64,000 nucleotides of DNA from Magallana gigas (GCF_963853765.1 NC_088861.1:5084001-5148000), one strand, 5' to 3'. Positions 68 to 50,200 are shown, numbered from the stretch's first letter. Notes: generated by a model not told the origin, from the letters alone. Translations and numbers: made by a program.

Positions 68-2493
68 CTCTGTCAATTGTTCCATTTTGTGTTCGACAAC
101 CAACAGTTGAATTGCACATCTCCCGGTTACAATGTGAACAGTCCTGTTGACAATGTTTCCCATAGTTTGGATACCTGCATTGTCTTGAACAGTTTATTCC
201 ATAGTAGCCATCCGGACAATCTGTCAAAATAATAAAAAGGGCCAATCCCATGGTCGAGCTAAATATAATTATATAATGATAACGTAACAGCACACGGGGT
301 TCGTTTTAAATAAAGGGTAAATACGACTACTGTTTTTAGAAAACCTTTTAATTCTTTTGAAATGTGTAAGTATTACGAAGACAAATAGTGCATGGATACT
401 TTTACTGTGGAATCAGTTTTATTCGGGTGAATGCTTGTCGTGAGACAAAATTTTTTTAGTTCGTGGGGACGTAATTTCGTAGGTAGCAGGTTCAATTTTG
501 CAAACAAGTACTAAATAAATGCTTGCACATACATTCGTTGGGATGTTAATTTGTGTGCAATGGTAACTCACGAATGCCACGAACATTGGTCCCTTATGAA
601 CATTGATAATTCCACAGTATTTGAGTTTTTGACAAAGTATGATCCAGATTTGAGCAGGAGTAGACGACTTAATTATGGTCTAAATAAGGATTCTATTAAA
701 ATTTGCTATGATCATTTCATCCAACCTATCATTTTTTTTCTCAGTATTAATGTGCTTCCTTTGCAAAAGCGCACTCTGTGAGTGAATTGAATACCAGGTA
801 TGGTTAGACAAATGGTTTATGCATAAATATTTGACATTGATTAATGTCACCAAATGTCCTTGAACATCAGTAAAGTTTAGAATTGTAGAAATAATCTATG
901 CAATTACAATAAAATGATATCACCCAGATATATTTCGAGCTTAAGCTTATGGTTTTCTCCTGATTGGTTTGAGTAAGATAGTGGCAACGAAGAAACACAA
1001 GACTTCTGGATATGGTTTTACACAGAGATTTGCTAAAGCCTTTATATGAAACAGGTTTTTTAAATTTTGTATTATATACAAGTAATGTATGGATTTTATT
1101 TGATCCATATTGGACCGGTGAGAAATAAAATCAGAACATTGCAAGTCAAATGACATTTCTTAGACAGCGGACGAATAAAAACATTACAGGGAATCGGAAG
1201 AACAAATCTTTCCAAAACAATACATACATAAATAGTACTGACTAAGATTTACGAATAAATTCACTCATTAAATCCATGCTTTCCTTTTGATTATTGTCAA
1301 TTGACATATTATTTATTTAGAATAAGACAACATGATGATGATAATGAATGAAAAAAGGTATACAATTTTTTTTTTTGGTGCAAACAAATAAAAAATAAAT
1401 GAATGGAAACTTTCGTCAATTTCAAGTTGATACAGTATAGACTATTTTAATAGTTTAATCTGCATCTATTCTAGAATTGTTCAGTATAACGATAGGGAAG
1501 AATGAATTGGCAGTCAGTGTATTTGTAAAATCATAATTGTACCACTCTGAGTTTGTTTACCACTTGTCATACAACCAAAGATCACACTGCAAGCTTCCTG
1601 ACCACACTCTGAACAATCCTGTTGGCAATTTATCCCATAGCTTGGATATCTGCATGATCTCGAACAGTGTCTTCCATAGTAACCAACCGGACAATCTGCC
1701 AAGTCATAGAAAATTAATAACAAATCTATGTCCAAATATTAAACAAACAATATTGAATTTTCATGTACAGATTGTAATAGGGAAAGCAAAATTATTTAAC
1801 GTCACTATACAATTTTGTAATTGCTTCTCTCCATTGTGAAGATTTAAAACGTACCACTAAAATACTGTGAAATCATCATTATTCATGGGGGACCAATGTA
1901 CGAGGCGTTCGTGGGTAACTCATACCCACGAATTTACATCCCCACAAACCTATTTACATTCACCTGTTTTATATTTATTAAATTTATCCCGATTACACTA
2001 CCAAGGAAATAACATCCCCTCGAACCAGGAAAACTTTTGCTACCCACGAACATTGATTCCAACGAATAAAAATGATTCAACAGTAAACAAAAATGAAAAA
2101 AAAAATATTTCCACTGACCAATGCATTTATTGTCCACCTTTTTCCATTGGCATTCCTCGATACAGTTTTCTTCTGATTTCCTTTTTGACATTAAGAGCAA
2201 TTGTTTGGAAAAAATTAAGAACATGCAATTTAAAGAAGTAAACGGTATATGTTAAATTGACAATAAAAGCAATAAATGCATTTAAATCGATTAAAAATGG
2301 AGAGTAAGAAGCATCCGTTTTTAAGCTTAATCTTTGGACATAACATTTATGTGGATTATTAATGAAAATACATAGATTTCTTTTTTTCTACATCATTCTT
2401 TAATATCTAAAAGTTTTACCTTTCGCAGTTTAAAGACGTGCATAATGTGGTGCTGTAGATCACAAAAACTGCGACAGAATTATGGAACATCAT
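68..2493 (-). CDS. EGF-like receptor gene 1 (type B by homology), 3'-partial: signal peptide, Cys/Trp exon and two EGF-like exons; TM exon lies outside the window
   Basis: Exons 2420-2493 (MMFHNSVAVFVIYSTTLCTSLNCE-R), 2119-2180 (KSEENCIEECQWKKVDNKCI), 1543-1695 (DCPVGYYGRHCSRSCRYPSYG...) and 68-220 (DCPDGYYGINCSRQCRYPNYG...). All are bounded by AG/GT, with phases 2, 1, 1, 1 joining in frame. An alternative in-frame ATG lies at 2535. Confidence 0.85.
405..617. mobile_element. MITE with CTGTGGAAT...ATTCCACAG termini and TA target duplication (Tc1/mariner-type non-autonomous)
   Basis: TA|CTGTGGAATCA ... TAATTCCACAG|TA. The orthologous copy is at 46987-47206. Confidence 0.75.
1865..2083. mobile_element. 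MITE of the CTGT/TA family in intron 2 of gene 1
   Basis: TA|CTGTGAAATCAT ... ATGATTCAACAG|TA. A closely similar inverted copy is at 38621-38838. Confidence 0.75.
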
Positions 2494-3986
2494 TTCTCTG
2501 TAGTGAATTTTTGATACTTTCTGATGCTTGAGCATGTGATTTACATTTCCTCGTGTTTAATTATGGCATGTGCAAATTTTAATTTCAAAAGAGTAGTTCC
2601 TACCAGTCAAATACCACCAATCGCTTGACTCAGTTGTTTAATATGAGTGAAATAAAGTTAACTTAGAATAGATTGTATATTGTTACTTGCACTACATTTT
2701 TTGATATTTGAAAATAAAACTAAAGATAATCATATTACAGCTTTTATTACATGGTAATGAATACGATATTATAATTAGATAGTATAGGCAAATACAAAAT
2801 TGAATATAAGCAAGCCTGTTCAAACTGTTATCTGCAACGATGGCATTTGAGTATATTTCTTGTCATAATATGCTATATTCATCCATAGTTTTGTGTTAAT
2901 GAGGATATATGAATGCTTGAAATAACAGTATTTGTAGTATCTATAGGCAAATTAATTTGGTATATGATTATAAGTTTGAAAAGGTGAAAACAATTCGATA
3001 GTAAAATAATAGAAACATTGATATTGCAGTTCTTCGTCATTAAATGGCGTGTACATTGTTCTTGAGGGTCATCAGACAAAAACAATGTATGATGTTTGAT
3101 TGGACATATGCAATTCAGCTGTTTGTAGAAGACAATGTTGGCATAAAAACATTTTACTGGTTACGTTTTGTTTAAAAAAAAAGATCTATGTGTTATTTAT
3201 CTATCCAAACGAAAAGTTACCCTACCTTCCTAACAAAACCCTTCTGGTTAATAGTATAATGATAATGAGGCACGATGTCTTGAATATGTCGAATAGACAT
3301 AAATAAAATTTATTTACTATTGCGCTTGTTTACAGCAAGAACCTTGTAATGTAAAGCATTTATATGAAATGAAAATAATGATTCCGATAATAATTACTTC
3401 AACATCTATATTTCTAGGATTTAAGACAAGTCATGTTAATACATGTACTCAGTTATATAATGAGAAACGTGATACAAATTAATGATATGTCCTCTAAAGA
3501 ACAACTCTATATATTGATGCTCCCCTCTATTTTCCATCAATTGTTTATAGTTTAAATCATCTAATGATACTCCAAGTCAACTATGTCACTTTCCCACTTA
3601 AATTTATAATTTTTCGCGCTGTAACCAGACTACACATACGGACTTTGTGTTTTAACACATTTCCGGTTAACAATGGTATTGGAAACAATGGGTGTTTACG
3701 GTTGGCAATCTAATTAGCCATCCCCTATTAACGGCTGCTTCAATAAAAGACTAAAATTGTATGTGTCATATAATGCAATTTTCTTGGGTCACACAAGAAT
3801 ACTGTTATTGGTTTTTTTACTTAGTTAATGAGTCATGACCAAATTAAGCTTGAATTGTAATACAGAACGTAATTTAAAAGGTTTATGTTTTGAGAGAGAT
3901 GAGCATTACATAACATGTACAAGCATTCTCAAATGTTCTATATTAAATTGAATTTATGATAGTTTATGATGTATGACATTTCATAA

Positions 3987-6091: not shown

Positions 6092-8310
6092 TCATCTTTT
6101 CATTTTGTACACATAAGCAATAATAATGGAAGTAGCAAAAAATCCAAATGTTATTAATCCAATGATGATGTATTTCAGTTGAATGGATTTTTCCTTTGAT
6201 GTATTATAATCTTAAAAACAAATATTTCTAAGTTTAATAAATCTGGCATATGAAACGTGCTTAACAATAATATTAGCAATTACCAATATCTTAATTAAGT
6301 ATACCTTGACTAGTTGGAATATCGGATGACATACAACCAAGTTTTGAATCGCACTCGTCTAGGTTACAGTGTGAGCAATCATGTTGACAATATTTTCCAT
6401 AATTAGGATATCTGCATGGACTTGAACAGTTTTCTCCATAAAAACCAGTTTCACAGTCTTTTAAGTGAGAGGAAGGATAAACATTAGCCATGAGCATTCA
6501 TTTTACCAACGATAAAAAAAATACGAATATGAACAAAGCAAAATCAAATATCATTTTATATTGTTATAAGTACGTCCTGTTAATCGGTGAAATGAATACA
6601 CAACGCTACGAAAATGAATTTTGAAAATTTAACTGACCAATACACTTGTTGAATGCTTCGTTCCACTGGCAGTCTTTATAACATTTCTGTTCTGAAAATC
6701 TATTTGAAAAATTAACTTTAACAATGAATTTACGTCACACTTTTAATAAGGTTACTTTATTTATTTCATTAGCAAAACTTATTACGTTTTGTTTCATTAT
6801 GATTTCACAATCTCTGCAAAAACATTTTTATAAATAGATTTCATATATGGTATAAACACGTATTTGCAAAGACATTGCGATTTTCCAGATATACATTTAC
6901 ACATGTATAATAAGTAGGTAAATAGGTTTGTTCTGAGGTTGTCCTTTCGTGTAAAATTAACAAAAAATGTTATAAAACAATGTAAATCGTTTGGTTTTGA
7001 ACTTCATATATATGTTATCGGTCAATGTTTTTTATTCTGAATCTTTCAATATTTCGTTTTTCTCGGGAAAATTTGACTAAACTATTTATGACGACATTCC
7101 TGTTCTTAAGATTTAAGTCCCAATATCTTCGAATTGTTTTTACATTTTTGTATTTATTTGGCTTACGTTAGCTAGAATGATAGTTATGTGATATGTGATA
7201 GGGGAGATCAAGCTCAAATCGACCCAAGATTTAACCAAAAATTAAAAATTAAATTAATTTTGTAAAAACGTAAAAGTTGTTTTCTTTTTAAACGTCGGGG
7301 CTTGATTAATTACATACGTCTCATCTCATAAAGATCTTTTAATGTCGAAAAGAAATTTATGTCAATGGTTTTTTAAGACGGGAGAAATATATTTTGTTAA
7401 AATATAATTATTTGAACACAATAGAGAACCTGGCAGTATAGAGCAACCAGAGAACTTCACCCCACAAACATTTAAATTACAATCTTTTTATAAATATTTT
7501 TGTACAAGCAGCGTACTTATATAAAAAATGTCAATGATATTACAATGGATTCCGGATAGGACCACCTACTTGCCCTATCAACATAGGCGTCGGAACCTGG
7601 GGGGCTAGGGGGGTTGCAAAGTTGGACCTAACCGTTAGGCACATAGCAGCATAGAGGGTTTAGCCCCCCCCCCCCACTTTTTCTCGTCGGAAATGTAATT
7701 GTTCACCTTAAAGGATTGAGACGTTGGAGTAAAAGGCATACTAGCCCCCCCCCCTTTCAATTTGCTTCCGACGCCAGTAATCAGGATTATATGTAACACA
7801 ACTAAAGACGATAACGTGTCATATTCTTTTAAATAAATTTTAATTTTTTAAAATTAGAATATTATTTTAAATGTAATAACATAGAGATTTTAAATCACAT
7901 AATGTGAACAAAAAGGAATGAAAAGTAAAACTCCTTTTAATTTTACAAAATTCATAAACAGTTTACAAGTTTCACATCTAATCGTGTTTGAATTTAGAAT
8001 GTGACCTTTATAAAATCAATGTACTTTCATTTTAATTTGTTGTTTCAGTATATTATGTGATGCATGTACAAATAGTACTTCAATTAAAATACAAGGAAAT
8101 TAGAACAAAATATCAGAATTATCTCTTTGAATCATCATTACTTCAATTGCGGCCATTTCGTTTCAATTAATTTCCATATCTTTACCAAACATATCACAAA
8201 AATATAAATATTTGACACAATGTAAGAAAGCATTACCTTTCGCAATTAAAAGATGCACAGAATATGGTACAGCAAAACAGAGAAATGGCAAGAGAAAGCT
8301 GGTATACCAT
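6092..8310 (-). CDS. EGF-like receptor gene 2 (type A, short tail), 135 aa
   Basis: Exons 8237-8310 (MVYQLSLAISLFCCTIFCASFNCE-R), 6638-6699 (FSEQKCYKDCQWNEAFNKCI), 6305-6457 (DCETGFYGENCSSPCRYPNYG...) and 6092-6210 (DYNTSKEKSIQLKYIIIGLITFGFFATSIIIAYVYKMKR*). The 408 nt join in frame with canonical splice sites. Confidence 0.85.
7583..7776. mobile_element. Small poly-G/poly-C MITE-like insertion
   Basis: Inverted ends GGCGTCGGAA ... TTCCGACGCC; GC-rich island in an AT-rich intron. No TSD found. Confidence 0.5.
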
Positions 8311-11300
8311 GACGCTGTTAAACATTTCTGATATTTCTTGTATTTATAACATTTGATAAACATTTCTTCCCTATAATCATAATGACATTCGTCATTTCCA
8401 CAAATGGTTACATCCAACTGACACCAAATATATGGCGTAAAATATATTATCAAAAGAGGAAGTCAGACATGACTCTCTAGCTGGATCTTTATCTTCAAAA
8501 ATGTTTAATTCTATCAAATATATATACCAACATTATTACTCTCTTATCTTGTAAAAGTACATGAAGTAAGAATATCAATTCTTAATACATATGCATATTG
8601 ATTCAGCAACCATTGGGTTAATCATAAATAACCTGTTCCTTCGTTTAACGTTACTAATGTTGTCTACTTGCTGTGGTCTTGGTCTATACGAGCAATTCAT
8701 AGCATACATGTATTTTATGTTGACTAAAATTGAATAACCAAAGGACTCATCACAGGTCAATCTTCTACTACGCGGCCGAATGAAAAAGATCGTGGTATGT
8801 GACACCATATGCCGGAAGAGGAGTACAACACGTACAGAATGTATGATACAAAATAATGTAATTTTTTTGGTTTCCTGTGGTAAAGAAAAGAAGTCTCATT
8901 AAGAACTGATTATCTAATATTTAATTGCTAGTGCAATAGATCTTCTAGAAATAAACATATCTTATTCTTTTAGCAAATTATTTTTTTCAAAGTCATTTTT
9001 TTACTGAATGTACATCGTAGACATCAATTAATAAACTGATTTAAAACACCACTTCTCCTTTACAATTCTCATTTACGTGTATCTATGTTCTTATCTATGT
9101 TCTTATATTTTGTTCTCTTTATTATCTTAACTATATGCAAAAATCATGTTCCTACTTTCCATATATCAGTAGCAAGTATACAGTATACAGAATCAAATTT
9201 ACTCAAGATACATTGTAACTGTAGAATACATGGCCTAACAATAAAAACAGTTCTTTGTACATAAATTAGCCAATGTTTGTAAATATTTATATATATTCTA
9301 GTACAGAGAACTTTTCATTGACACACACCAAAATTGTAATTATATTTTAACAAAAGTATTGTTGAGTCTATGATATTTGCTTAAATTTTCTGTTATATAT
9401 CTATATCATATATCTATATTGTATTGTCTAAGGTATGTTTATGGCGTACAATGACAAACATAGGAGATCTAAACAAAGGCAATTACAGGACAGCGGTTAA
9501 CTTGCTCATGACTTGGTCTTACTATTCTAATTCCAGAAGAATGAGGACAACATACATACTTTGTGGCTTAGATAATCAAGGCTGTTTCCAATATTTAGGT
9601 TTTAGTTTATCCCAAATGGATGGACAATTTGGAGACAAGGGAGAGGGTATCTAGTAATCTATTAAACAACGTTGTAATTACATCATGATTTATTTGAATA
9701 TCATTAGAAATCAATCAGAAAATATTTTTTAGTATTATATTATTAAAAAAATACTCCAAGGCAACTTACAAGAAAATCTGGTTTATTTAATTTTCATAAT
9801 GTTTACCTTTTTTTTTTTTTACTTTTTTCCTACCTTGTGATATAGAGAATATGCGTTGTTTATCATTTTTGTGGATATTATGAAAATTCAAAACCGTTTA
9901 CAATACTAAATATCTAAGACTTCAAAATTGTTTTACAAGCATCTTTGCTTCGATAAAAATGCATTTGTACAGCAGATCATATAACAAATAAGGAAATTGT
10001 CAATGTTTCCTGTTTCCTGTATTTAATCTGTGCAAAAAGCCTCAACCCTCAAAATAGAATAGTTGTTCTAAATTACGAAGCATTTTGAAACTAAGTGTTG
10101 TTAGATACATTTAGAAACTTTACTATTTTAAAAGGAAAACATGATTTTTATCTATGGCGAAAGTTTTTGACGTTACTAATGTTATATTTCTTTAGTTACG
10201 GGTCCATTTTAACAAGACCTTGGACTTTTGGTAGGACGTAAATGTTTATTTCTTGCATCAAAACAAGGTAAAAAGGGCGCTGGTCTAATGATCTATTCAT
10301 AGAATGCGTAAGTCTTAGCTTAAAAACCAGAAAAAATTTATTGATTTTTAAGAGCCATGGCTGAGTGGCCAACAATGAAATAGACAGGCCTACGTTAAAT
10401 TGCTGTTTCATACAATTACCCACAGTCCAAGCACTTGTTAAAATGATTCTATATATTTTTTTATACTTTATATTTTCATTTTAGTCCAAAGTCCCTCTGA
10501 GGAGTTTCGTGGTCATAAACTGTTGACATACTGTATCCTATGTAACACAAAACGTCATTCTTTAAAATTGAAAAATGTTACGAGGGCAATTTTTAGGTTC
10601 TGTTCACTATAATTTCAACAGTATTTTGATCAAAGACCCTTTGACAAACAGTACCTCAAACTCCAATTGCATGCTCAATAATAATTTTTGGAGGAAACAA
10701 AATAATTTATATCAGCAGGTTTTGCCAAGCAGCGCAATGTGTGACGTAGAAAAAACGTCAGCCGTCGTTGTTAAACCCATCACATCGTTTACGGGAACAT
10801 TCACGTTCTTTTTCCGAAAATATATTAGAAAATAATATTTTTTGAACATGTACTCTGAGTCTACATTCACTATGCATTTCTAGCTTTGTTTTTAAAAAAT
10901 TTCCTAAGAAAAAACGATCTTTCGACTTCCAACTTGCCCTGTATTACTTGTTGTATAACATCTTTCTTCCTGAAATGTATCGCTCAGCATTTTGTCATCC
11001 TTTTTTATCGGTCGGGGTTTCAATTTCATTTGATGTCATTATACTATTATATTATAATTTTATTTACTTTCAAGATAAAGATACTTTCTTAAGATTTTAT
11101 TCAAGGTCTTTTCAAACTTTTAGTATTTATGGGTGCGCTGCCTCAAACGCTGATGTCGTCATTTTAATACGAGTTCACACTTTAACTTGTCACTAAACGC
11201 GATATAAAATCTTCAAACATTTCGTTATAAGCAAAATCCTTTATACATATCCTAATACATGTGATAGAATAATTAACAAATCAAAATCCCTTTTTATTTG

Positions 11301-12027: not shown

Positions 12028-15000
12028 TCAGACTTGAAGTGTACTTCCTAGCATGTAAATTCCGCCGTCCGTAGGGTCGTTATAATCACAAATTATAGTA
12101 TATTGCTCTGGAGATCTACGATTCGTGGAAAAAGTGTGTTCTGTTACCACAGACCCAACACAGTGTGCGTTTTCTCTTAAAAATCTCGTGAAAAACCTTC
12201 TGTTTGTTATTGTTATAATTAAGAAAGCTTCAATCAGCACCACGACTCCAAATCCGACAGAACAACCAATAATAAAAGCAAGATCTGAATCCAAACCTCC
12301 TTCTCGCTTTCTAAAAAAAAAACCTATTTTATCAATTTTAGAATTCAAAGGTTATGAGAAATGAATTATACTTGTACTATAAATTTCAGATACATGTAAT
12401 AGTTTTAAAAAGTTCCTTCGGGGGAAGGATTATGGATCCTTGCCTTTCTTGTTCGATCGAAAAACGCGACCAAAGCCATTTGTTTGAAGCAATCCCTAGA
12501 CGAAGGTTTTATTTGTCACTGATACGTACCCATCATCACCATTCGCAGCGCGGCTGAAATTGTGGTCTTTAAATTGTTCGTAATTGATTAAATCTCACTG
12601 GCTCTTACGGTGTGTCGTGCAATCGTGGTATTCGTAGAAAATAATTTGACCGTCAAAACATTTTCCACTATCAACATGATCATTTTCAACGGTGAATTTT
12701 CATTATCATTGTATCCGATTGCATTGTATCGTTTCTGAGCGCTGCATGTCGTATTTAATAGTGCTGTCCTAATTGTGATGATCTGAAGAAATCTTAGAGG
12801 AGTCAAACAACACACTGCGCTACGATCAGATGCGATCTGTCAATATAGCCAGTCGTACGAAATAGATATATCTGTCGGGGTCAAATCGTAGCTCATCTTC
12901 CATCTTGATCGTGAAAAATCGTAATCATGATCATGTCCCATCGCAACAGAGCACATTGGCTCATGATTAACTTATCGTAACGTTTACTAACGTATCTGCA
13001 AGTATTTAAGAGTCGGAGAATCATGTCGTGATGTTCGGATCAGATCGAGATTCAATCGGAAATTCTATGTAAGACAAATTATCAGAACCAATTTTGTCGT
13101 ATCTAAACGGGCAATGAAATTGTGACAGATCGCGTCACCTGAAATACGCTTATCGTGACCTTACCTTTTCAACGCTCAACAAAACGCATAAGGTGGTATC
13201 GCCTCGCATCACCTCGTACGTAGGTCAATCATTTTAGTGAAGTTCCACGATCAGGTACGAGTTGTCAATCGTAGTGTTAGACGACAAATCGCATTACAGT
13301 GGGTACCTAGCATCAGGCTTTATTTTCTGTCAAATTGATTTAATTGCATACATTTAATTTATTGTATATCTGCAAATTAGACATAACATCAATCAAGGGT
13401 ACCTTTGTATATCATTACATTACTTAAACAGCCAAACGATGCATTACACACTTCCTGCTCACAGTGGGAGCATTCCTGTTGGCAATCTTTTCCAAAATTT
13501 GGATATCTGCATGGACTTGCACATGATGAATCTCTGCCATTCAGTCAATTGAAAGGTGACTGAAAGGTAACTGAAAAATTACTGAATGGCATAGCTATGC
13601 CATTCAGCCACTTTCCAGACCATTCAGTTATCATTCAGTTGACTGAATGGCAGAGCTTCATCCTATGTTGAGCAATTTATTCCGAAAAAGCCAAGCGGAC
13701 AGTTTGTAAAATTATATTAACAAGAAACGTATTCTTAACAAACTATACAATTGAGGTTCATAATGGGTTGGTTTTTTTTAAACTAACTTAACTGTATAGG
13801 GTATAGTACTACGTATATGCTCGCACACATGAAAAATGCATTATTTACTACAAACCAATATATCTATTGTCTATCTCACTCCAATGACAATCTTCTTGGC
13901 AATTTTCCTTGTCGTTCCTTTTCAGAAATAATATAATTTTAGAAAAAGTATAATTAAAGAAGTTTTCAAAATAGGGTAAATCATTGATATATACATTAGC
14001 TAACAGAAATAAGTTAAAATGAGCAAATCAGGTGACAATGGGAAAGACAATCTCAAATTGTATTTAATTCATCGAACTCAGCCTTATATATTGACGCAGC
14101 AGCTGCTTTTCTCTAAATACATTATCTTTATTTGTGCATAGAACTATTTATTTATTGAAAATTTATGCTTGACACATTATGCAGTCTTAAGATGAACAAA
14201 ATAAGATGCAGCAAAGGACGCGAACTGCTAGAGAGGGCTAATGTTTCATTCCACTAATTTTGCACTGCCTCTTCCCGTTTTACATTTCCTCATTTTATAT
14301 TTAATTATTATCACGTGTTCTATTCTAAAAGTTATTTTCCTTACAAGTCGAAGTTAATGAATGTTTTCACAAAGGAAGAAAATAGATGTGTCTCACATCT
14401 TTATATAATTTCTTATAAATTTGTTAATATCCATTCTAACCTGTGGTAGACATAGTGTTACACATAGTGTTACATTATGACGACTTGCCGCAAAAAAATT
14501 CATTGATATAACATTCGTTCACAAAATTCTTTTACGTAATAGGTTTTGCAAATCAAATATTTACCTGTGCACACGTATCAGATGCCTTGTTTTAAGCTTA
14601 TCTACGTGTAACTTATCTATCGACTAGAAAAGCATTTATGTAGTTTTTGAAATAAATCACAATTTCTAAAGCATCTTTACTTTGCGCACATAATCATTTT
14701 CATATCCAACATGTTCCTCAATGCTAACTATAGATCAAGTGGTATAAGTACGACTCCGTTGACGACCCAGTCTTTCAGTGTTTAAAATCAAAACTATGTT
14801 CAATATTGTAATGGTATGTTTTGTGTTATTTAAATTTGTGTATCTTTTGCCATATGTTAACAATAACTAACCTATTGAAGGTCCGTCCATCTGTCCCACG
14901 TGAAATAAAATGTATGTATATGTAAAGGCAGTTCAAATCACGAGATCGCCGATGAAATAAGTTTCCGAGAGCACAAAAGCACTACGGATGAAGGCGATGA

Positions 15001-33428: not shown

Positions 33429-34031
33429 GGTTGATACATTCTGATGTTTCAGAATGTGATTCACATTTCCTTTTTTTTTTTATTAACTAGGGCATGTTTC
33501 AATTTTAGTTTGAAACAAGGAAAAAGAGTTTAACAGTAAAATGATAGAATTACCACAGCTCTCCATTATTAAATGACAGGAACATCGTTCTTGGGTGTTA
33601 TCAGAATATTCTAATGCTAAATTCATCGACTAGAAAAGAACAAGTTGTCATTTAACAATTTTACCGCTTTACTCGGTTAAAAAATACAGTCGGATTTGGT
33701 TATATATCTTCCTTGCTTAGCTTCTCAAAGTGACGGACCTAAATAAGCGCAATGGATCTGAGAGTGGCATAGACCATCTGTACTGTGGTGTGACTTTATT
33801 GTTGCGCTTTTTAGAGTAAATCGTATCTCGGGGAATCTTGAATTTTAAAGCCTTTATATCAAATTATGATTCTGGTAATAAGCGTTTTAACATTCTTATT
33901 GTTCGGATTACAGTCATTATGATTCTCAGATATATAATTAAATGCGTGATGGAAATTAAGCATGTGATATCTACTGAACAACTTTATACATTTATTGTGT
34001 AATGATGAGTTTATTATGAAGATTTATTCCC

Positions 34032-34067
34032 CCAAGAAAAATCATATATAAATATGATTTTTCTTGG
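34032..34067. repeat. Perfect 16-bp stem, 4-nt loop palindrome
   Basis: CCAAGAAAAATCATAT-ATAA-ATATGATTTTTCTTGG. Confidence 0.85.
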
Positions 34068-36711: not shown

Positions 36712-38883
36712 TTACTTTTTTAACCTTCTTCCAAGGAATATGCAAGTCATGGAAACAAATATGACAAAAAACCCAGACGTTATTAATCCAATAATGACAA
36801 AATCAAGGCCAAAGGAGCCTGAAAAGAAACAATCGGTCAGTTAATGTAGCTCACTACTCTAAGGCTTTCACTTTTAATGAACCTACGTCATAAAATAGCG
36901 ATTTAGATGTTTTGTTAATCTGCCTGAATGTATCGATTTGGTTGATAATTGGTTAAGTATAGAACTTGTGAACCGCAGATCGCGATTTCTAATCAGCATT
37001 TGTTTATATCTACTTTTATTCATATTTCATTTTTTAACTCTTTTAAATCTAACGTACATATTTTTAGCCTCTTTGACCTGTTTACTCCTTCTACATCGGG
37101 TACCTTATAATTGAATGATTTTCTGTTGGTTGAGGACCATTATTAAGGAATCATGAATAAGTCATACATCAATACATTGTTTTCGATATAGATTAAATGT
37201 ACCCTGATGAAATGGTGCATCAGTACTAGTTGTCAAACAGCCGAATGTTGCATTGCACTGAAGACGATCACAGTGTGAACAATCCTGTTGACAGTTTGTT
37301 CCATAATTTGGATACCTGCATGGTCTTGAACAATTAGTTCCATAAAAACCAGTCGGACAGTCTATCATTAAATGAAAAGCTATGTAATCATTAGGATCAA
37401 CAAGAACGACATATGTATATAAAAAATATATTGAGATGCAAAAAAAGATATTTGATATATATTGTTGATTTTCCTTTAAAATATGTACCCTTATTGCTTT
37501 TTATTTTTGGTTGTATTTGATAAAATAAACAACTGTTTTATTCGAGGAATAGGGAATCATTTAGTATTATGAGGGATCAAGCATGGTCGGGAGCGAACAA
37601 AGGGCTTAATGATAGATTTGAACATGCTCAACTGCTCAACCGTAGTTGATCAATTAATAATATTTTTTAAATGATTCCTTATTACTTATATCTATATACT
37701 TTTAAACAAATAATCCAATAAAATATGAAATTGTTGATATTTGTACGTTATTGGGAGTTGATTTTATTCAACTCTCCTATGCAGTTACTCAAACAAACCG
37801 AAAGTGAAACAGTGTTTGGACACCAGCACAGACCATTGCTACTGACAAATTTTAGTTCTTGAAAATAATCGATCAATTCGATGTAATGTATGCTAAAGCA
37901 TTGTTTTTCAAGGAAACTTTTTTATAAATACCTAGAAAAGAGTCAGATTTTAAATGGTACGAACAATTAAAAAAAAATTTGTAGTCGTATGTATTCCTAC
38001 GCCAGAGTTCAACTCGACGCTCGACTGTCTCCGTAAATCCTTGTCGGAGATTTACGGTGTCAGCCGAGCGTTTGGTTGAACGAGATTAGAGTTCAATATT
38101 GCTTGCATCCATACAATTTTCGAGAAATATTTCTTTTACTGATACATAGCTTGATTGAATTTATCTTATCTTTAAATTTTATTTAACATGATTCATATGG
38201 GGGTTTCTCGACATTCTTGTCGAAAAAGTCTAAAAATTCATATTATAAAAATGTGCGTAATTCAAATTAGAAACTACATGTACTTGTCATACAAAATAAC
38301 ATATCATTGATTTTAAAATAAACATTGACAAAATCAACTCCCGTCAGTTCTTCAGTACTTTGATTTTTAATTTGTATAGCTATACAAACCCTGCCATCAT
38401 CATTTTCGATACTTATGAATGGTATTGAACTATGTGTCACAAACCTTATTCGTATTGTTATCACAGAAAAAGATCTAGACACTGGAATATGTTAATAAAC
38501 TACCGATTGATAGGCTATATATTATGTTAAACTGACCATGACATTGGTTAAGTTCCTTACTCCATTGGCAATCTTCTCGGCAATGAAATTCAGAAAACCT
38601 AGTCAAAAATAAAATAGATACTGTGGAATCATTTTAATTCGTTGTGATCAATGTTCATGGGAAGCCAAATTTTCCTGGTTTGAGGGGATGTAAGTTCCTT
38701 GGTAGTGTAATCGGGATAAATTTAATAAATATAAAACAGGTGCTTGTGTATAAGTTTTGGGGAATGTAAAATCGTGGGTATTGGTTTCCCACGAACGCCT
38801 TGAACATTGGTCCCTCACGAACAATGATGATTTCACTGTAATTAACTTGATACTTTGCAGAGAAATGTATATTCATTTGATGA

Positions 38884-38979
<96 letters not shown>

Positions 38980-40460
38980 GAATAAGTCCTTGGTATAGTT
39001 AACGACATAGAAAAAGGTTTTCAGTAGACGATAACACAATAATCCATTTCTCTCTAATTTAATCCAGAGCGCTTTCGCCTGATCGGCTCTTCAGTGGATT
39101 TCAAATTGTAACAGAAATAACAAACGTTGACGTCGTTATTATGACGTCATAAAGTAGACAACGTCACGAACAGTGTAAACAATGTTTGGAGATGACGGCA
39201 AATTATTTTTTACAAACACATGTAAACGTAATAAAATATGTACAGATGATATTGTTTTAAAATAAGAGGTTATTTAAATGAAAGCTGAATGAAGTCAATG
39301 CAGAATAAATAATGCAATTATCTATTAGGTTTAGGTTTAAATTTATTTATGAAATATTGTTCTTTTGCAAGTCGCAGCTGATCACTTTCCTCGCGTACTT
39401 TGTAAAATGGAAAAATTTCAAACCGGCCTCTCCCGCACACATCAAAATGTTCACTACACGGAGTGTTACGAACAGAAGGATCCCTTATCTGCTGCTTATG
39501 TACCCTCACACGGTCGGCTAATTTGGTCCCTGTTTGGCCAATGTAATTTTCTCCGCATCCATCGCAGGTCATGCAATAAATGATGTTTTGTTGTAACCTA
39601 CAATCCTAGAAATCATAATATTTTCAATACCACTAGGTATTGTTTACCGGTTTTACATCAGTCCAATATTTTAAAGGATATCATAAAGGAAAACAATCTT
39701 ATCTACAGCAGAAGACAGCCCCCTAACCTTAAAAAACTTCTTACCAGAGCCAACTTTACTTCGACAAAAGAAATGTTTCGGGTTTCTAAATGCGAGGATT
39801 CTTGATGTGGGACTTGCGCCTATATTCAGACAGGACAAACAATTTCATTCAAAAACGGTACAATTTTCAAAGTCAACTCCAATATGAACTGCAAATCCAA
39901 AAACATCATTTTTTGCATGACCTGCGATGGATGCGGAGAAAATTACATTGGCCAAACAGGGACTAAATTAGCCGACCGTGTGAGGGTACATAAGCAGCAG
40001 ATAAGGGATCCTTCTGTTCGTAACATGCCGTGTAGTGAACATTTTGATGTGTGCGGGAGAGGCCGGTTTGAAAGTTTTCCATTTTACAAAGTACGCGAGG
40101 AAAGTGATCAGCTGCGACTTGCAAAAGAACAATATTTCATAANNNNNNNNNNNNNNNNNNNNNNNNNNNNNNNNNNNNNNNNNNNNNNNNNNNNNNNNNN
40201 NNNNNNNNNNNNNNNNNNNNNNNNNNNNNNNNNNNNNNNNNNNNNNNNNNNNNNNNNNNNNNNNNNNNNNNNNNNNNNNNNNNTTTATTGATCGTCTCTC
40301 ATTTACATGTCCAGATGCAGATGCTATATCTTTTTCTACAAATACATTTTTTCCTAAATATATTATTACAAACTTGTTATTCTTACCTTTCGCAATTTGA
40401 AGATGCGTGCAAAGTTGAAATACACAACAGCAAGACTACAACATAATTCTGGAGTCTCAT
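36712..40460 (-). CDS. EGF-like receptor gene 6 (type A, short tail), 133 aa
   Basis: Exons 40387-40460 (MRLQNYVVVLLLCISTLHASSNCE-R), 38537-38598 (FSEFHCREDCQWSKELNQCH), 37203-37361 (DCPTGFYGTNCSRPCRYPNYG...) and 36712-36818 (GSFGLDFVIIGLITSGFFVIFVSMTCIFLGRRLKK*). The 402 nt join in frame. Intron 1 spans an assembly gap. Confidence 0.8.
38621..38838. mobile_element. MITE of the CTGT/TA family in intron 1 of gene 6
   Basis: TA|CTGTGGAATCATT ... ATGATTTCACTG|TA. Reverse-complement homologue of 1865-2083. Confidence 0.75.
38889..38976. repeat. (TA)44 microsatellite
   Basis: Uninterrupted TA run. Confidence 0.95.
39005..40142. mobile_element. Penelope-like retroelement fragment (Neptune-type) with an inverted duplicated GIY-YIG end
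   Basis: Plus strand about 39695-40142 reads ENNLIYSRRQPPNLKKLLTRANF...KCEDS*CGTC...NMNCKSKNIIFCMTCDGCGENYIGQTG...HF (Cys-rich linker plus GIY-YIG endonuclease). The minus-strand copy 39318-39587 of the same endonuclease C-terminus is followed by a 3' repeat region holding a hammerhead motif. Confidence 0.85.
39061..39100 (-). ncRNA. Minimal type I hammerhead ribozyme
   Basis: Minus strand reads AATCCA-CTGA-A-GA-GCC-GATCA-GGC-GAA-A-GCGC-T-C-TGGATT. This gives an intact catalytic core, a 6-bp stem I, a 3-bp stem II and a palindromic stem III, as in Penelope pseudo-LTR hammerheads. Confidence 0.85.
40143..40283. other. Assembly gap (141 N)
   Basis: Run of N inside the right arm of the Penelope inverted repeat. 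Confidence 0.99.
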
Positions 40461-44690: not shown

Positions 44691-46581
44691 TATTTGAGTA
44701 TTTTGACTAGATTAATCCTCATATCAGAACCTGTATTTTTGTTGTGTTCTACAACAGAATAAGAACTCGAAATTATTAAATGGGAATTTGACAATTTTGT
44801 TAAGCAGTTAGTTTAATAATTTCATTTACAGATATTTTCTAATATACTTGTCAAGACTCTAGAATGTCGTTAACTCGTTATAAAAACCGATTGTATACAC
44901 CCCTTGTACAACACGTTGTATACACCCCGTGTACAACATCACTTTTTCGCAAATATTTCTGTATTAGATTGATTTTATTCACAGAAAATTTATGAATAAT
45001 CAAACACTGATGGTATGTAATTGTTAGTAACAAAACAGTGATGATAAACGGAACATTTGTCCAGATATTTGATCATTAACGTACGTCAGGGTCAAACTCA
45101 CCCTGACAGTCGCAATTGTGTTGAGGTGTTTGAGAAAACTAGAACATGTACAATGGAATAAAAAGTGTCTATGCATTCCGTAATTCATGCTTTCTTCCGT
45201 AAGCATACTCTTTTTGGCAAAATAAGTCCTTTAATTGAATAATTGGACAAATATCGGACCTTCGACACCGTTTTCTCGCTTCGGAAGCATACACCCCGTG
45301 AACAACATAACATACACCCCGCATGTTGTGTTATACGTGGTGATAAATGCCGCGGTAATAAAATTGAATACTTTATTCAGTATCTAAAAGATCAGTTCCT
45401 TGATGTTAACGTTTTTATTTGCCATCTGATAATTTGATAAGACATACATAGAACTAGTCGTATTTCTTGATTGAAGCACTATTGAAACTTATCTGGTGTC
45501 CTCTTTTAGTTCTTTTGATTCAAATTACCTTTTATTGAAACACTGGAACATTTTAATCGAGTTTAGGGACAATAAACATCGATAGGTACCAGTCAATCAA
45601 TGATCGAACTAACTTTTTAAAAACAAAATGGCTGCCAATATGGCGGCGACCAGTGCTGGAAGAAATTTTTTTGGGCCTTAGTACCCCGGATTCAACATTC
45701 ATTTTTCACTGATTTTCTTATATATACGTGTTACCATTAATCCTCGCTTCGCGAGGCAGGCTTCGCCCGCCTCTCGCTGCGCTTGGTTTAATAAGGGTTT
45801 TACAAAAAAATGCATATTTACAAGTACTAAAATTACATGTTCTCGTATCGCAATGAGCTCGCTAGCATGTATGTGTTGTTGTCAGTAGGTATATTCTCAT
45901 CGCAAATGTCACTGCGTTGTTCAGGTACTCTACACAGTGTGGTAGTGACGTGTTCTGACACGGCAGATCCAACATACATGTAATAGGCGTTTTCTCTTAT
46001 TTGTCTCGAGTAGAATCTTCTGTTTGCAAAAGATATGACCAAGAGGACTGCAATCACAATTACAGCTGCAACCCCAACGAAAACTCCGATAACCAATGGG
46101 AGATTCAAACCTTGTATCATATTCTGTGATTCTGAATAAAAACAGATCGCATATGGATAAAAAAATATTTTGACTTATGTTTGATTTTAGCGCAGTTGCT
46201 CATCTTTAGACTGTAGTAACATTTTCTGAAAGATATTAAAGACAAATAGTAATAGGGTATATAAACATAAAAAATATAAATACTTCTTGGTTTATTTGAA
46301 TTATTTGATTTTTTTATTCAAGCTTGTAAATATGTTAGAAAATTGAAACATCCCTAATGATAAAAAATATCAAATTCTACGGTAACGGACTACGTGCTTG
46401 TGGATACTTAGTTATTAGCAAGCAACGTATCGCTTTATCATAAACGTTTAAACAAGTGAAGAAAGAATATATGGTGTTTTTCTTTTTTTTTCAATTTGAA
46501 AAAAGTTTCGCCTTGTGGATGATAGGGTATACCATTTGGTGCTTTTATACTTTTATACATGTTTCATTTGGTATGCTATAA

Positions 46582-46584
<3 letters not shown>

Positions 46585-46655
<71 letters not shown>
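46585..46655. repeat. (AT)n microsatellite abutting a splice donor
   Basis: A 71-bp AT run that begins at the T of the GT donor of exon 46657-46809. Confidence 0.95.
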
Positions 46656-46658
<3 letters not shown>

Positions 46659-46986
46659 CTGTCGATTGTTCCATCCTGTGTCAGACAACCATCAGTTGAA
46701 TTGCACATCACCCGGTTACAATGTGAACAGTTCTGTTGACAATTTTTCCCATAGTTTGGATACCTGCATTGTCTTGAACAGTTTATTCCATAGAAGCCAT
46801 CTGGACAATCTGTTAAAATAATAAAAAGGGCAAATCCCATGGTCGAGCTCAATATTATATTAGGATAACGTAACAACACGCGGGGTTCGCTTTAAATAAA
46901 GGGTATGTAAGACTTCTCTTTTGAGAAAACCTTATAATTCTTTTGAAATGTATGAGTATTACGAAGAGAAACAGCGGATACTTTTA

Positions 46987-47206
46987 CTGAGGAATCATTT
47001 TTATTCGGGTCAATGCTTTTCGGTAGCCAAAATTTACCTAGTTCGTGGGGACGTAATTTCGTATGTAGCAAGTTCCATTTATAAACAAATACTAAAGAAA
47101 TGCTTGCATACACATGTATATCTTCGTCGGGATGTTAATTCGCGTGCAATGGTTACCCACAAAAGCTACAAACATTGGTCTCCCATGAACAATGATGATT
47201 CCAGAG
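46987..47206. mobile_element. MITE orthologous to 405-617
   Basis: TA|CTGAGGAATCATT ... ATGATTCCAGAG|TA, in the same intron position as in gene 1. Confidence 0.75.
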
Positions 47207-50200
47207 TATTTGAGTTTTTGACAAATATGATCCGGATTTGAGCAGGAGTAGACGACTTAGTTATGGTCTTAACAAATCTGCTATGATCATTACATCAAAC
47301 CTATCATTTTCTGTTAATGTCTATATGCTTCCTTTGCAAAACAGCAAAAAATGGTTTATTTTTGCAATAAAATGATCTCAGTTAGATACATTTTGAGCTT
47401 AAGCTTGTGGTATTCTCGTCAGATTCTTTTAGGTAAGATAGTGTCAACGAAGAAAGACACAACTTCTAGACATAGTATTACACAGAGATTTGCAAAAGCC
47501 TTTATCTGTGAAATAGTTTTTTTTTAATTTTGTATATTCAAGTAATATATAGATTTTTTTATGCATATTGGACCGGTGAGAGATAAAATCAGAACGTTTT
47601 CAAGACAACTGACATTTCCTAGACAGCGGACGGATTTAACAGTATAGGGAATCGGAATTACAAATCTTTTAAAACATTACATGCGTAAATAATACTGACT
47701 AAGATTTACAAAAAAAATTCACTCTTTTAATCAATAATATCCTTTTGATTATTGTCAATTGCCATATAATTTATCTAGGATAAGACATTGTGATGATGAA
47801 TAATGAAAAAAAAGTATACAATTTTTTTTGTGTGCTGGGACAGACAAATAACAACTAAATGAATGGAGACTTTCGTCTATTTCAAGTTGATATGGTATAG
47901 AGTATTTTGATATTTTAATATGCATGTCAGAATTGTTCTCATTGGCGATAGGGAAGATTAAATTGACAGTCAGTGCATATATAAAATCTTAATTGTACCA
48001 CTCTGAGTTTCTTTACCACTTGTCATACAACCAAAGCTCTAACTGTAATCTTCCCGGTCACACCCTGAACAATCCTGTTGGTAATTTATCCCATAGTTTG
48101 GATATCTGCATGATCTCGAACAGTGTATCCCATAGTAACCAACCGGACAATCTGCCAAGCCATGGAAAATTGTATGTCCAAATATAAAACAAACAGTATT
48201 TAATTTTCATGTACACCTTGTAATAACAAAAACAAGATAATATCACATTACATCATTATTAACGAAATTGAGTTTGCTCTCTAAAGATATAATGCACGTA
48301 TGTCAAACACGACATTGGTATGGTCAGCCATTCTCACTGGCCTCTACTGGCATGGGGCGACACTTAATTTGGGAAAAAATCAAAAAAAAAGGAACAATCA
48401 TTAATAGGAAAGTTAGATCAATTGTAGATTTGGGAGGGGCTGTTATTTCACACCGAAACATCTTAGCAAAGCTTACGCAATTATTTAGACACGACGGCAC
48501 ACTCCTGTCACGAACAGGGAATGAATTGTACCTCCAAAACTTGGAGGGGACTTGTTCTCATTTTTATCAAACACTGCCAGAGAATTCTCATAAGACAATC
48601 TTGGTTTAACTACGCATCTCATGGGAGGGGCGGGGATGAAATTGTTTTTCTTTTCTTGTTTGGGTACATGTGTGTAAGACTGTTATTCTTTGGGTAATGG
48701 AGACCATCATATCAATAATCGTGGCGGGTCCTGGGGGACCTAATGGGAGGTCTTTTCGGGACATGCCTGGCGTTTTCCAGCATCTGTCAATTAGGTGGAG
48801 GGCTGGTGTATATGTGTTGGAAAATTGGCATTCCATGTGCTAATGATCGGGGTTTACAGGTATCACGCCATACTCGGGACCCCCTCTACCTCCTAACAAG
48901 GGGGGGGGGGGGGGGAGGGGGAATGGCTCACCGGGTGTACTCAAGGTTAGCGAGTAGGAGTATATACCATGGTGCAATCACCGGAAAACAGGTTAAACAG
49001 TCATGTCTCGAGTCATCCCCGTCAACATGTCATTCATCAAGCATGGGACATCTCTGGCACTTGTGATCAACACAAGGCCCCCGTCTTGCCCCTTTTGCAC
49101 CTTTTTGCGTGTTGGTATTTCGATGGACCCCCAGACCTTTGCATAGCTGAGCAAGGACAGTGTGGCCTTTCTTAACCACCAATGGACTTTGTGGTTAACA
49201 TGTTTGTCTTTTGTCATAAAGTCATTGTCATTTATTTGTGTATTGATTCTGTGTTGGCAGGTTGTGTGAATTGTTGCCCATCTTGTTCTGTATTCAATAA
49301 TAGCAAACTAGCAAAGCTGTGGGAGCGTGTTCTGATGAACACTGGTGCAACTCCATAAATAGCAGGATTGCAGACAGTCAGGCAAAATTTCTTTGCTATC
49401 GAATATCATGACTGTTCAATTAATGGCATGTGGCAATTAGATAGGCAATTAGATAGGCAATTAATTCCTTTTAGACACTTACCTTCAATTGCATGACTCG
49501 GTTATTTAATATGTGTGACATAAAATTAATCAAGAATTGGTCTTTGATTGTATATCGTTATTAGCACTACACTTTAAATATCTTAAATTAAAACTTAAAA
49601 ACTCATATTACATGGTAATGGAAAATGTATTAGACAGTCTGAGCAAATACAAAACTTGAACATAAGCAAAATTGTTTAAACTGTTAATTGTATCTACAAC
49701 AATGACATTTGAAAATGGTCTGTTTCATGATATGCTATACTCCATTTTTATTTTGGTGTGAATGAGAATATATGAATGCTTGAAATAATACATATCTGTA
49801 TTGATAATGCAAATAAACTTGCCCTATAAACGGCAGCTTGGGTGTACAACTAAGATTGTATATCCTCGTGTGCCCAATAGTCGTGCGCTTAAGAAATAAT
49901 CTGATTTATTGAGCGGTTAAATTAAATTAAGGGTTATTTATCACGATAATTAAACTAACTGAACTGTATTCTGATTTTCTGTGTATCTAAAATACATTAA
50001 AGTGCTTTAAACAGCTTATTATCGAGGCCGAAACGAAGCGAGGATTCATTGTCAGCCATCTTTGTTTGAAACCAGTAGTCGTGCACCCGGATATGTAAGC
50101 AAGAATGAGGCCAAGAAAAGTAAATTTTGTGTGGTTTGTAACTTTTTCATTTGGATATCACAAATAACATATCAAATATATTCATAAATATCAACACATT

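What the first reader, a model, noticed from the sequence alone, without database searches (positions are those of the whole stretch)
68..48151. Alternating array of long-tail and short-tail EGF mini-receptors: candidate invertebrate paired-receptor cluster
Seen: seven co-oriented loci share the same ectodomain exons but end in one of two TM exon classes. Type B (TM then NRRF, tail of about 60 aa with Tyr motifs) is at 12028, 26090 and 45833, and is inferred by homology for gene 1. Type A (IIG-x4-GF TM, tail of about 4-23 aa) is at 6092, 20440 and 36712. The order is B-A-B-A-B-A-B, with a 12-20 kb repeat unit. Established: vertebrate paired receptors (SIRP, PILR, CD300, KIR) combine similar ectodomains with opposite or absent signalling tails; MEGF10/CED-1/Draper-like EGF proteins act in phagocytic recognition. 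Inference: a two-gene B+A cassette was the duplicated unit, giving signalling/decoy or receptor/co-receptor pairs. Caveat: type A TMs lack the mid-membrane Lys/Arg typical of adaptor-coupled activating receptors.
Basis: partly seen in the sequence, partly recalled or inferred. Interest (0 to 1): 0.85.

Follow-up and report, generated by a model that had tools for sequence, protein, structure and literature searches.

The report
Oyster mini EGF membrane-protein gene array
This stretch of Pacific oyster chromosome holds a real, partly decayed tandem array of very small EGF-type membrane-protein genes that alternate between a long tyrosine-rich tail and a short tail, but nothing shows that they work as vertebrate-style receptor pairs.

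Summary
On the minus strand of this Magallana (Crassostrea) gigas window, two unrelated last-exon classes alternate B-A-B-A-B-A-B at the stated coordinates.

- **Separate genes.** Each locus with a readable 5' end has its own signal-peptide exon and Cys-rich mini-exon. RNA contigs from three studies splice A6 (EGF to TM-A, then at least 460 nt of 3'UTR) and B5 separately, with no A-to-B joint. RefSeq models them as separate genes of 133 to 252 aa. The "alternative ends of one gene" idea is excluded for A6/B5.
- **Decay in this haplotype.** B7 and B3b are pseudogenes. B5 lacks half an EGF exon. A2 has a premature stop. A 5' fragment (3a) and an inverted relic interrupt the alternation.
- **Assembly gap.** It lies in a transposon insertion inside A6 intron 1 and touches no exon.
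- **Duplication.** The traceable duplications are large blocks: a six-gene unit repeated in C. angulata, and B1/B7 with 4 kb of upstream DNA. No two-gene cassette is visible.
- **Pairing.** A and B ectodomains are only 50-75% identical. A exons group with each other, not with neighbouring B exons. No TM-A has a charged residue.

The receptor-pair reading is unsupported. This is an ordinary lineage-specific family, already annotated but uncharacterised. The scan reported a similar array 9 Mb away (s1-380958).

The parts
45833..48151 (-). B7, a type B pseudogene. E1 is 48151-48017 (in-frame stop, two Cys>Tyr). E2 is 46809-46657 (intact). The TM-B exon is 46131-45833 (intact, ends RYENM). There is no signal-peptide or mini-exon.
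   Evidence: The segment homologous to B1's signal-peptide and mini-exons is replaced by about 1.2 kb of unrelated DNA at 48242-49461.
36253..40460 (-). A6, an intact type A gene of 133 aa. Signal-peptide exon 40460-40387, mini-exon 38598-38537, EGF exon 37361-37203, TM-A exon 36818-36712, 3'UTR to at least 36253.
   Evidence: The spliced ORF equals RefSeq XP_011435892 apart from one residue. The 37202/36817 RNA joint appears in three runs, and the last exon is contiguous to 36253.
38977..40283 (.). Transposon insertion in A6 intron 1: a (TA)n tract, inverted Penelope-like GIY-YIG fragments (39318-39589 and 39900-40142, 98% alike) and the assembly gap at 40143-40283.
   Evidence: Both C. angulata copies lack it, and their alignments stop at 38976 and 40284.
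26090..33428 (-). B5, a type B gene. Signal-peptide exon 33428-33340, mini-exon 33069-33011, E1 32812-32654, E2 with only its 3' half (31495-31415), TM-B exon 26382-26090 (ends RYENM).
   Evidence: RNA joints 33339/33068 and 33011/32812 are present, and the RNA carries a complete E2. The window lacks about 97-99 bp that are present in both C. angulata copies. RefSeq LOC105334205 and LOC117692162 correspond.
20440..21687 (-). A4, an intact type A gene of 155 aa. Signal-peptide exon 21687-21617, mini-exon 21417-21356, EGF exon 21221-21069, TM-A exon 20621-20440. The tail is RRKQQWVLNIRRSSFVDRLIYL.
   Evidence: The orthologous exons in C. angulata L002 are 96-100% identical.
17759..18276 (-). Fragment 3a: a signal-peptide exon (18276-18217, phase 1, no mini-exon) and an EGF exon (17911-17759). 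It has no TM exon of its own.
   Evidence: Its EGF exon groups with A4 and A2.
16771..16925 (+). Degenerate EGF-exon relic on the opposite strand, with a frameshift and a Cys>Trp change.
12028..14250 (-). B3b, a type B pseudogene. The signal-peptide exon (about 14250) has stops. The mini-exon (13917-13856) has a Cys>Tyr change. The EGF exon (13716-13392) has lost its acceptor (AG>AA) and is split by a 142-bp palindromic MITE at 13527-13668. The TM-B exon (about 12285-12028) has NAHY>NAHC and no RYEN ending.
6092..8325 (-). A2, a type A gene of 135-140 aa. Signal-peptide exon 8325/8310-8237, mini-exon 6699-6638, EGF exon 6457-6305, TM-A exon 6210-6092. Its TGA stands where C. angulata has CAG, which removes 19 tail residues.
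68..2535 (-). B1, a type B gene that is intact as far as the window reaches. Signal-peptide exon 2535/2493-2420, mini-exon 2180-2119, E1 1695-1561, E2 220-68. The TM-B exon lies beyond the window start.
   Evidence: The C. angulata orthologue is 252 aa and has a TM-B exon about 300 bp after E2.

Best explanation
This is a lineage-specific tandem array of independent genes for very small type I membrane proteins in the Pacific oyster. Each gene has four parts: a signal-peptide exon, a 59-62-nt Cys-rich mini-exon, one or two phase 1-1 EGF-type exons of the MEGF/SREC/Tie2 kind, and one of two unrelated last exons.

Type B ends in a GxxxG-containing TM helix and a tail of about 63 aa. The tail carries an oyster-wide NA[HL]Y (NxxY) motif, a second conserved Tyr (IYMLA) and, in Magallana and Ostrea, a C-terminal RYEN[MVI]. 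I infer that B proteins signal through tyrosine phosphorylation and SH2 or PTB adaptors.

Type A ends in a different TM helix and a short tail, ancestrally about 22 aa ending SSFVxRLxY. I infer that A proteins are non-signalling or differently sorted relatives.

The array evolves by block duplication, gain and loss of symmetric EGF exons, transposon insertion and pseudogenisation. It differs strongly between haplotypes and sister species. The alternation most likely goes back to an old A+B pair that was copied, and later to larger blocks. Nothing ties neighbouring A and B proteins to one ligand.
For: - Gene plan and independent 5' exons.
- Spliced transcripts for A6 and B5 in three RNA runs, with no joint between them, and a terminal TM-A exon.
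- RefSeq and UniProt models of 133, 161, 168, 191-197 and 252 aa for separate LOC genes in M. gigas and C. angulata.
- EGF type: a profile of the family hits EGF-like repeats of 6u11 (E 0.0025) and Tie2 (E 0.017) with matching Cys spacing. Atlas look-alikes are MEGF10/11, PEAR1 and SREC.
- The B tail family has only 20 clusters at 50% identity among 1.84 billion proteins. The named full-length members are all from Magallana, C. virginica and Ostrea edulis.
- Conserved NA[HL]Y and Tyr motifs.
- Conserved end of the A tails.
- Block duplication in C. angulata.
- Lesions in B7, B3b, B5 and A2.
- A exons form one side of a branch in the EGF-exon tree.
Against: - No function has been tested. Tail signalling is inferred from motifs only.
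- Pfam does not call the ectodomain at its thresholds, and the AlphaFold model is unusable (pLDDT 46.8).
- The RNA contigs are shallow (depth 5-9). Intronic and intergenic contigs of similar depth are present, so expression is low and the tissue is unknown.
- The C. angulata gene model for the A4 orthologue extends more than 4 kb past its TM-A exon, across fragment 3a. Some read-through or alternative 3' structure at that one locus cannot be excluded.
- The trees rest on 132 nt.
Confidence: 0.72

Rival explanations
1. The array is a true paired-receptor system. Each short-tail A acts as a decoy or co-receptor for the neighbouring long-tail B on the same ligand, and the A+B pair is kept together by selection.
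For: - The strict alternation of TM classes is shared by M. gigas and C. angulata over at least nine loci.
- A6 and B5 are both found spliced in the same RNA runs.
- A6's EGF exon is 68-75% identical at protein level to the neighbouring B exons, more than to A2 or A4.
- Both TM classes carry small-xxx-small motifs that could mediate helix packing (read from the sequences).
Against: - Ectodomain identity between neighbours is 50-75%, far below that of vertebrate pairs. A exons group together rather than with their neighbours.
- TM-A has no charged residue, and no ITIM or ITAM is present.
- The A tails have a conserved motif of their own.
- Two of the four B partners are pseudogenes here, while their A neighbours stay intact.
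- C. virginica has B-B neighbours with no A between them.
- The RNA runs were chosen because they hold the stretch, so finding both genes in them says nothing about co-expression.
Confidence: 0.12
2. A and B last exons are alternative 3' ends of larger transcription units, such as A6+B5 as one gene.
For: - A-to-B spacing is only 2.5-4.4 kb.
- All EGF exons are phase 1-1 and so can be combined freely.
- The NCBI gene range for the C. angulata A4 orthologue runs past its TM-A exon into the next locus.
Against: - Every locus except the 5'-truncated B7 has a signal-peptide exon or a relic of one; it is intact in A6, B5, A4, 3a, A2 and B1.
- In three runs the A6 contigs continue from TM-A into at least 460 nt of 3'UTR.
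- B5 contigs start from B5's own signal-peptide exon.
- No A6-B5 joint was seen.
- RefSeq annotates them as separate genes.
Confidence: 0.04
3. The cluster is mostly a graveyard. The loci are decaying copies with no current function, and the transcripts are noise.
For: - B7 and B3b are dead, B5 lacks half an exon, and A2 has a premature stop.
- Fragments and many transposon insertions are present.
- RNA depth is low, close to the intronic background.
Against: - A6, A4, B1 and (if the damaged exon is skipped) B5 keep open frames, all Cys residues and canonical splice sites.
- A6 differs by one residue from RefSeq, and by 3 and 10 of 133 residues from the two C. angulata copies (P0035, P0027), with no stop or frameshift in any of them.
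- The tail motifs are conserved as far as Ostrea.
Confidence: 0.1

Closest known systems
MEGF10 / MEGF11 / PEAR1 / SREC (SCARF) / CED-1 / Draper family of multi-EGF engulfment and scavenger receptors
   Same: Both are type I membrane proteins whose ectodomain uses the same laminin-like EGF spacing (CxxGxxGxxC...C...C.C). RefSeq names members 'cell death abnormality protein 1-like', 'scavenger receptor class F member 1-like' and 'MEGF6/10_11'. The profile hits Tie2, SREC and EGF repeats.
   Different: There are only one or two EGF units instead of 6-17, and no EMI domain. The tail has NA[HL]Y rather than NPxY and lacks YxxL. Type A has almost no tail. Pfam EGF models do not reach threshold.
Vertebrate paired receptors (SIRP, PILR, CD300, KIR, LILR)
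   Same: Both are clustered genes with related ectodomains that end either in a long tyrosine-bearing tail or in a short tail.
   Different: The ectodomains are EGF-type, not Ig or lectin, and only 50-75% identical between neighbours. The short-tail members have no charged TM residue for an adaptor. No ITIM or ITAM is present. A and B ectodomain exons form separate lineages rather than being homogenised.
Other mini EGF-receptor arrays of the same oyster genome (scan note s1-380958, 9.1 Mb away)
   Same: Both involve small proteins with one to three EGF modules in tandem, an apparent A+B doublet pattern, and a follow-up verdict of a large annotated family shaped by block duplication.
   Different: It is a different locus, and the second class there was soluble through loss of the anchor. 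Here both classes are membrane-anchored by unrelated TM exons. I did not re-test that note.

Membership tests
EGF-like domain proteins of the MEGF/SREC/Tie2 (laminin-type EGF) kind | Repeating Cys pattern C-x2-G-x2-G-x2-C-x3-C-x8-C-x3-C-x(1-2)-C-x4-C-x5-C that is recognisable by sequence profiles | tested here: met
   The family profile aligns column for column with EGF repeats of 6u11 (E 0.0025) and Tie2 (E 0.017, 0.024). All eight Cys residues are invariant in the alignment. Atlas neighbours carry EGF_laminin and EGF_PEAR1L.
EGF-like domain proteins of the MEGF/SREC/Tie2 (laminin-type EGF) kind | A hit to a curated Pfam EGF model above its gathering score, or a confident EGF fold | tested here: not met
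   No Pfam EGF family reaches threshold on the exons or on full-length proteins. The AlphaFold2 model has mean pLDDT 46.8, with the ectodomain below 50, so no fold search was run.
CED-1 / Draper / MEGF10 engulfment receptors | N-terminal EMI domain plus a long array of EGF repeats | tested here: not met
   The proteins are 133-252 aa, with a 20-aa Cys-rich leader and one or two EGF-type exons.
CED-1 / Draper / MEGF10 engulfment receptors | Cytoplasmic NPxY (binds the CED-6/GULP PTB domain) and YxxL motifs | tested here: not met
   B tails have an invariant NA[HL]Y (NxxY, no Pro), then IYMLA and RYEN[MVI]. There is no NPxY and no YxxL. A tails have none of these.
Paired activating/inhibitory receptors | Neighbouring genes with near-identical ectodomains | tested here: not met
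   Neighbouring A and B EGF exons are 50-75% identical at protein level. A exons group with A exons.
Paired activating/inhibitory receptors | The short-tail member has a charged TM residue that couples to an ITAM adaptor | tested here: not met
   The TM-A helices of A2, A4 and A6 contain no K, R, D or E.
Paired activating/inhibitory receptors | The long-tail member carries ITIM or ITSM motifs | tested here: not met
   The in-window tails end S[LR]RYENM (+3 is Met). The other tyrosines have A or G at -2 and S or A at +3. Only the paralogues P0008 and P0046 read LRYENV.
Paired activating/inhibitory receptors | Both members bind the same ligand | not testable with these tools
   This needs binding assays.

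The most novel reading that the evidence does not exclude
The alternating array is an invertebrate, EGF-based counterpart of paired receptors. Long-tail B proteins would signal through NxxY and YENM phosphotyrosine docking. Neighbouring short-tail A proteins would modulate them as decoys or TM-associated partners. The A+B unit would be kept together by selection while individual copies turn over between haplotypes.
Probability: 0.1. Interest if true: 0.65.

Novelty: new member of a known kind. Interest (0 to 1): 0.3.

Why it matters
Bivalves have very large, fast-evolving repertoires of EGF-type surface proteins whose roles in immunity and cell recognition are mostly unknown. This locus is a clean, small example. 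It has two tail classes on one ectodomain plan, exon-level modularity, and strong structural variation between haplotypes and sister species: an exon deletion, a MITE inside an exon, a nonsense allele and block duplication. It matters mainly as a documented case for studies of presence/absence variation and receptor-family turnover in oysters, and as a source of testable tail motifs. It does not currently open a new kind of system.

Tried and rejected
- **AlphaFold2** on a 15-sequence family alignment gave pLDDT 46.8 and only the TM helix was confident, so no fold search was run.
- **Pfam** on single exons and on full proteins gave no family above threshold.
- **The search for homologous proteins with the A6 orthologue** returned only itself and an ORF fragment, so the taxonomic range of type A stays unknown.
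- **The look-up of encoding contigs** had no record for P0003, P0008 or P0022, so the M. gigas reference and O. edulis loci could not be read.
- **Raw poly(A) reads of run X21** (2 Gb sampled) put almost nothing on the genes, only on a repeat at 34.0-34.9 kb.
- **Cassette congruence.** The A tree is (A6,(A4,A2)) and TM-B similarity gives ((B7,B5),B3). This fits neither way of pairing the genes, but with 132-nt exons and a decayed B3b it carries no weight.
- **AU test.** It appeared to reject A-exon monophyly (p 0.023), but only because of fragment 3a, which has no TM exon and groups with A4 and A2. Without it the A exons form one side of a branch.
- **Rfam** found nothing in the window.
- **Literature searches** for the LOC and XP identifiers and for paired receptors in bivalves found nothing relevant.
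- **B7 transcription.** I did not lay reads on B7, because the single read-laying run was used on 31401-37400. Whether B7 is transcribed is open.
Full report
**Source and layout.** The window is AT-rich (about 31% GC). It comes from the Pacific oyster Magallana (Crassostrea) gigas. The type B exon at 26093-26365 is 100% identical to UniProt A0A8W8MI25 / RefSeq XP_011435871, and oyster DNA runs hold the stretch. All family exons lie on the minus strand, apart from one relic. In the order of transcription (high to low coordinates) I call the loci B7, A6, B5, A4, 3a, B3b, A2 and B1.

**The observation.**
- Type B last exons end at 45833, 26090 and 12028.
- Type A last exons end at 36712, 20440 and 6092.
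- EGF-type exons lie upstream of each.
- The two last-exon classes show no BLASTP similarity to each other.
- B tails are about 63 aa. A tails are 5 aa (A2), 22 aa (A4) and 7 aa (A6).

**Gene plan.**
- Each locus with a readable 5' end has a signal-peptide exon ending ..S[LSF]NCE|R in phase 2.
- Each also has a 59-62-nt mini-exon such as KSKENCLEDCQWSKVDKCI, running from phase 2 to phase 1.
- One EGF-type exon follows in A genes and one or two in B genes. These are 135-159 nt and phase 1-1.
- The last exon carries the TM helix and the tail.
- Spliced models with canonical GT-AG sites give open frames for A6 (133 aa), A4 (155 aa), A2 (135 aa), B5 (199 aa if the damaged E2 is skipped) and the in-window part of B1.
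- A6 differs from RefSeq XP_011435892 by one residue.

**Separate genes or alternative ends.** I laid RNA contigs from three studies and one raw-read run on 31401-37400.
- All three contig runs show the A6 joint 37202/36817 (EGF exon to TM-A exon, GT..AG on the minus strand).
- The contigs run on from TM-A to at least 36253. TM-A is therefore a terminal exon with a 3'UTR.
- For B5 they show the joints 33339/33068 (signal-peptide exon to mini-exon) and 33011/32812 (mini-exon to E1), followed by E1 and then a complete E2.
- No joint links A6 exons to B5 exons.
- NCBI models the genes separately in M. gigas and C. angulata (133, 161, 168, 191-197 and 252 aa).
- Depth is low (5-9), and intronic and intergenic contigs of similar depth exist. 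Expression in these samples is therefore weak.
- The runs were chosen for holding the stretch, so they say nothing about co-expression.
- The C. angulata gene range for the A4 orthologue extends beyond its TM-A exon, across fragment 3a. I could not resolve this.

**The assembly gap.** The N run at 40143-40283 lies in A6 intron 1.
- Its left flank is an inverted copy (98%) of a Penelope-like GIY-YIG fragment.
- Both C. angulata copies lack the whole 38977-40283 segment, and their alignments stop exactly at 38976 and 40284.
- The exons on the two sides match one RefSeq protein at 100%.
- Order and orientation across the gap are therefore credible, and no reading frame is involved.

**State of the copies in this haplotype.**
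- **B7.** The segment homologous to B1's signal-peptide and mini-exons is replaced by about 1.2 kb of unrelated DNA. Its E1 has an in-frame stop and two Cys>Tyr changes. Its E2 and TM-B exons are intact.
- **B3b.** It is dead several times over. The signal-peptide exon has stops. The mini-exon has a Cys>Tyr change. The EGF acceptor AG has become AA, and a 142-bp palindromic MITE sits inside the exon. The tail has NAHY>NAHC and lacks the RYEN ending.
- **B5.** About 97-99 bp are missing, which removes the acceptor and 5' half of E2. That sequence is present in both C. angulata copies and in M. gigas RNA. Conversely, one C. angulata copy lacks E1. The number of EGF units therefore varies between copies.
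- **A2.** It has TGA where C. angulata has CAG, which removes 19 residues. The C. angulata A2 tail and the A4 tail share an ending, SSFV[QD]RL[RI]Y. Type A therefore has a conserved tail motif of its own, which A6 lacks.
- **Interruptions.** Fragment 3a (signal-peptide exon plus EGF exon, no TM exon) and a plus-strand EGF relic lie between A4 and B3b.

**Duplication history.** Within the window only exons align between units, except for B1/B7.
- B1 and B7 are 82-84% identical over 1.7 kb.
- Collinear patches of homology continue about 4 kb upstream, to 5919 in B1 and 55404 in B7. They stop at the 3' end of A2, and no A relic lies upstream of B7.
- On C. angulata chromosome CM046780.1 the order is A6a-B5a-A4-...-A2-B1-A6b-B5b. 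A6a and A6b are 59 kb apart, and the two blocks are 84-95% identical.
- M. gigas also has two B5-type loci.
- The traceable unit is therefore a six-gene block, not a two-gene cassette.
- The EGF-exon tree separates the B E1 and E2 exons from the A exons once fragment 3a is left out (support 69/76). Fragment 3a groups with A4 and A2.
- This fits an old A+B pair that was copied. It argues against homogenisation between neighbours. The data are too short for more.
- In C. virginica two related B genes are neighbours with no A between them.

**What the proteins are.**
- A family profile aligns with EGF-like repeats of 6u11 (E 0.0025) and Tie2 (E 0.017), and weakly with SREC-I.
- Atlas look-alikes beyond the family's own mollusc clusters are MEGF10/11, PEAR1-type and SREC proteins.
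- Pfam thresholds are not reached, and the AlphaFold model is unusable.
- The B tail is a narrow family: 20 clusters at 50% identity among 1.84 billion proteins. The named full-length members come from Magallana, C. virginica and Ostrea edulis. Two long non-oyster hits look spurious.
- Across oysters the tail keeps NR[RK]F after the TM helix, an invariant NA[HL]Y-V-[GA]-S-V, and a second Tyr. RYEN[MVI] at the C-terminus is kept in Magallana and Ostrea but not in the C. virginica paralogues.
- From general knowledge, NxxY resembles PTB-binding NPxY motifs, YxN is a Grb2 SH2 consensus and YxxM a p85 consensus. This is inference only.
- The B TM helix has a GxxxG motif. TM-A has no charged residue.

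**Verdict.** The array and its alternation are real, and the loci are separate genes. The paired-receptor interpretation fails every criterion that could be tested here. It survives only as a low-probability possibility.

The locus is best described as a variable, partly decayed member of the large oyster repertoire of mini EGF-type membrane proteins. It is annotated but uncharacterised. An earlier follow-up in this scan reached a similar verdict on a different array 9.1 Mb away (s1-380958), which I did not re-test.

Noticed in passing
window 42185-45788 (inverted repeats 42457-42925 and 44882-45348; ORF 44234-44482, + strand): A 3.6-kb insertion lies between B7 and A6. It is bounded by 469-bp inverted repeats (98% alike) and carries a C2H2 zinc-finger ORF. 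It is absent from the matching place in C. angulata, so it is probably a DNA transposon.
   Followed up: partly
window 50404-52128, minus strand: Three adjacent ORFs look like one pogo/Tigger-like transposase: DDE_1 endonuclease parts at 51358-52128 and 50848-51309, and a PHD-finger ORF at 50404-50826. They sit in a GC-richer patch (39-41%) inserted into the DNA homologous to the B1 upstream region.
   Followed up: partly
window 1860-2085, 38619-38843, 401-626 and 46983-47215: A MITE-like repeat of about 226 bp (up to 87% alike) is present in introns of B1, A6 and B7. The 38619-38843 copy lies inverted relative to 1860-2085.
   Followed up: no
window 13527-13668: A 142-bp palindromic MITE sits inside the EGF exon of B3b. 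It is a clear example of exon disruption by a miniature transposon.
   Followed up: yes
window 34000-34900: This repeat is highly transcribed (contig depth up to 140, and it takes nearly all the raw poly(A) reads). Many reads run on into unlike sequence, so it is probably a dispersed transposon family rather than a local gene.
   Followed up: no
window 46585-46655 and 38889-38976: Long (TA)n microsatellites are present. One abuts the donor site of B7's E2 exon and the other lies at the edge of the A6 intron insertion.
   Followed up: no
window 26382 versus 26364 (B5 TM-B exon acceptor): RefSeq isoforms of 197 aa and 191 aa differ by EYQK[LF]P. This fits two alternative acceptors 18 nt apart in the last exon.
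   Followed up: partly
L004 (C. virginica CM130312.1) 14294-21842: Further family-like genes lie on the opposite strand, with EGF-type exons and a third kind of TM and tail (…ILLPKRRSSHREDENHVEH…). The family therefore has more tail classes than A and B.
   Followed up: no
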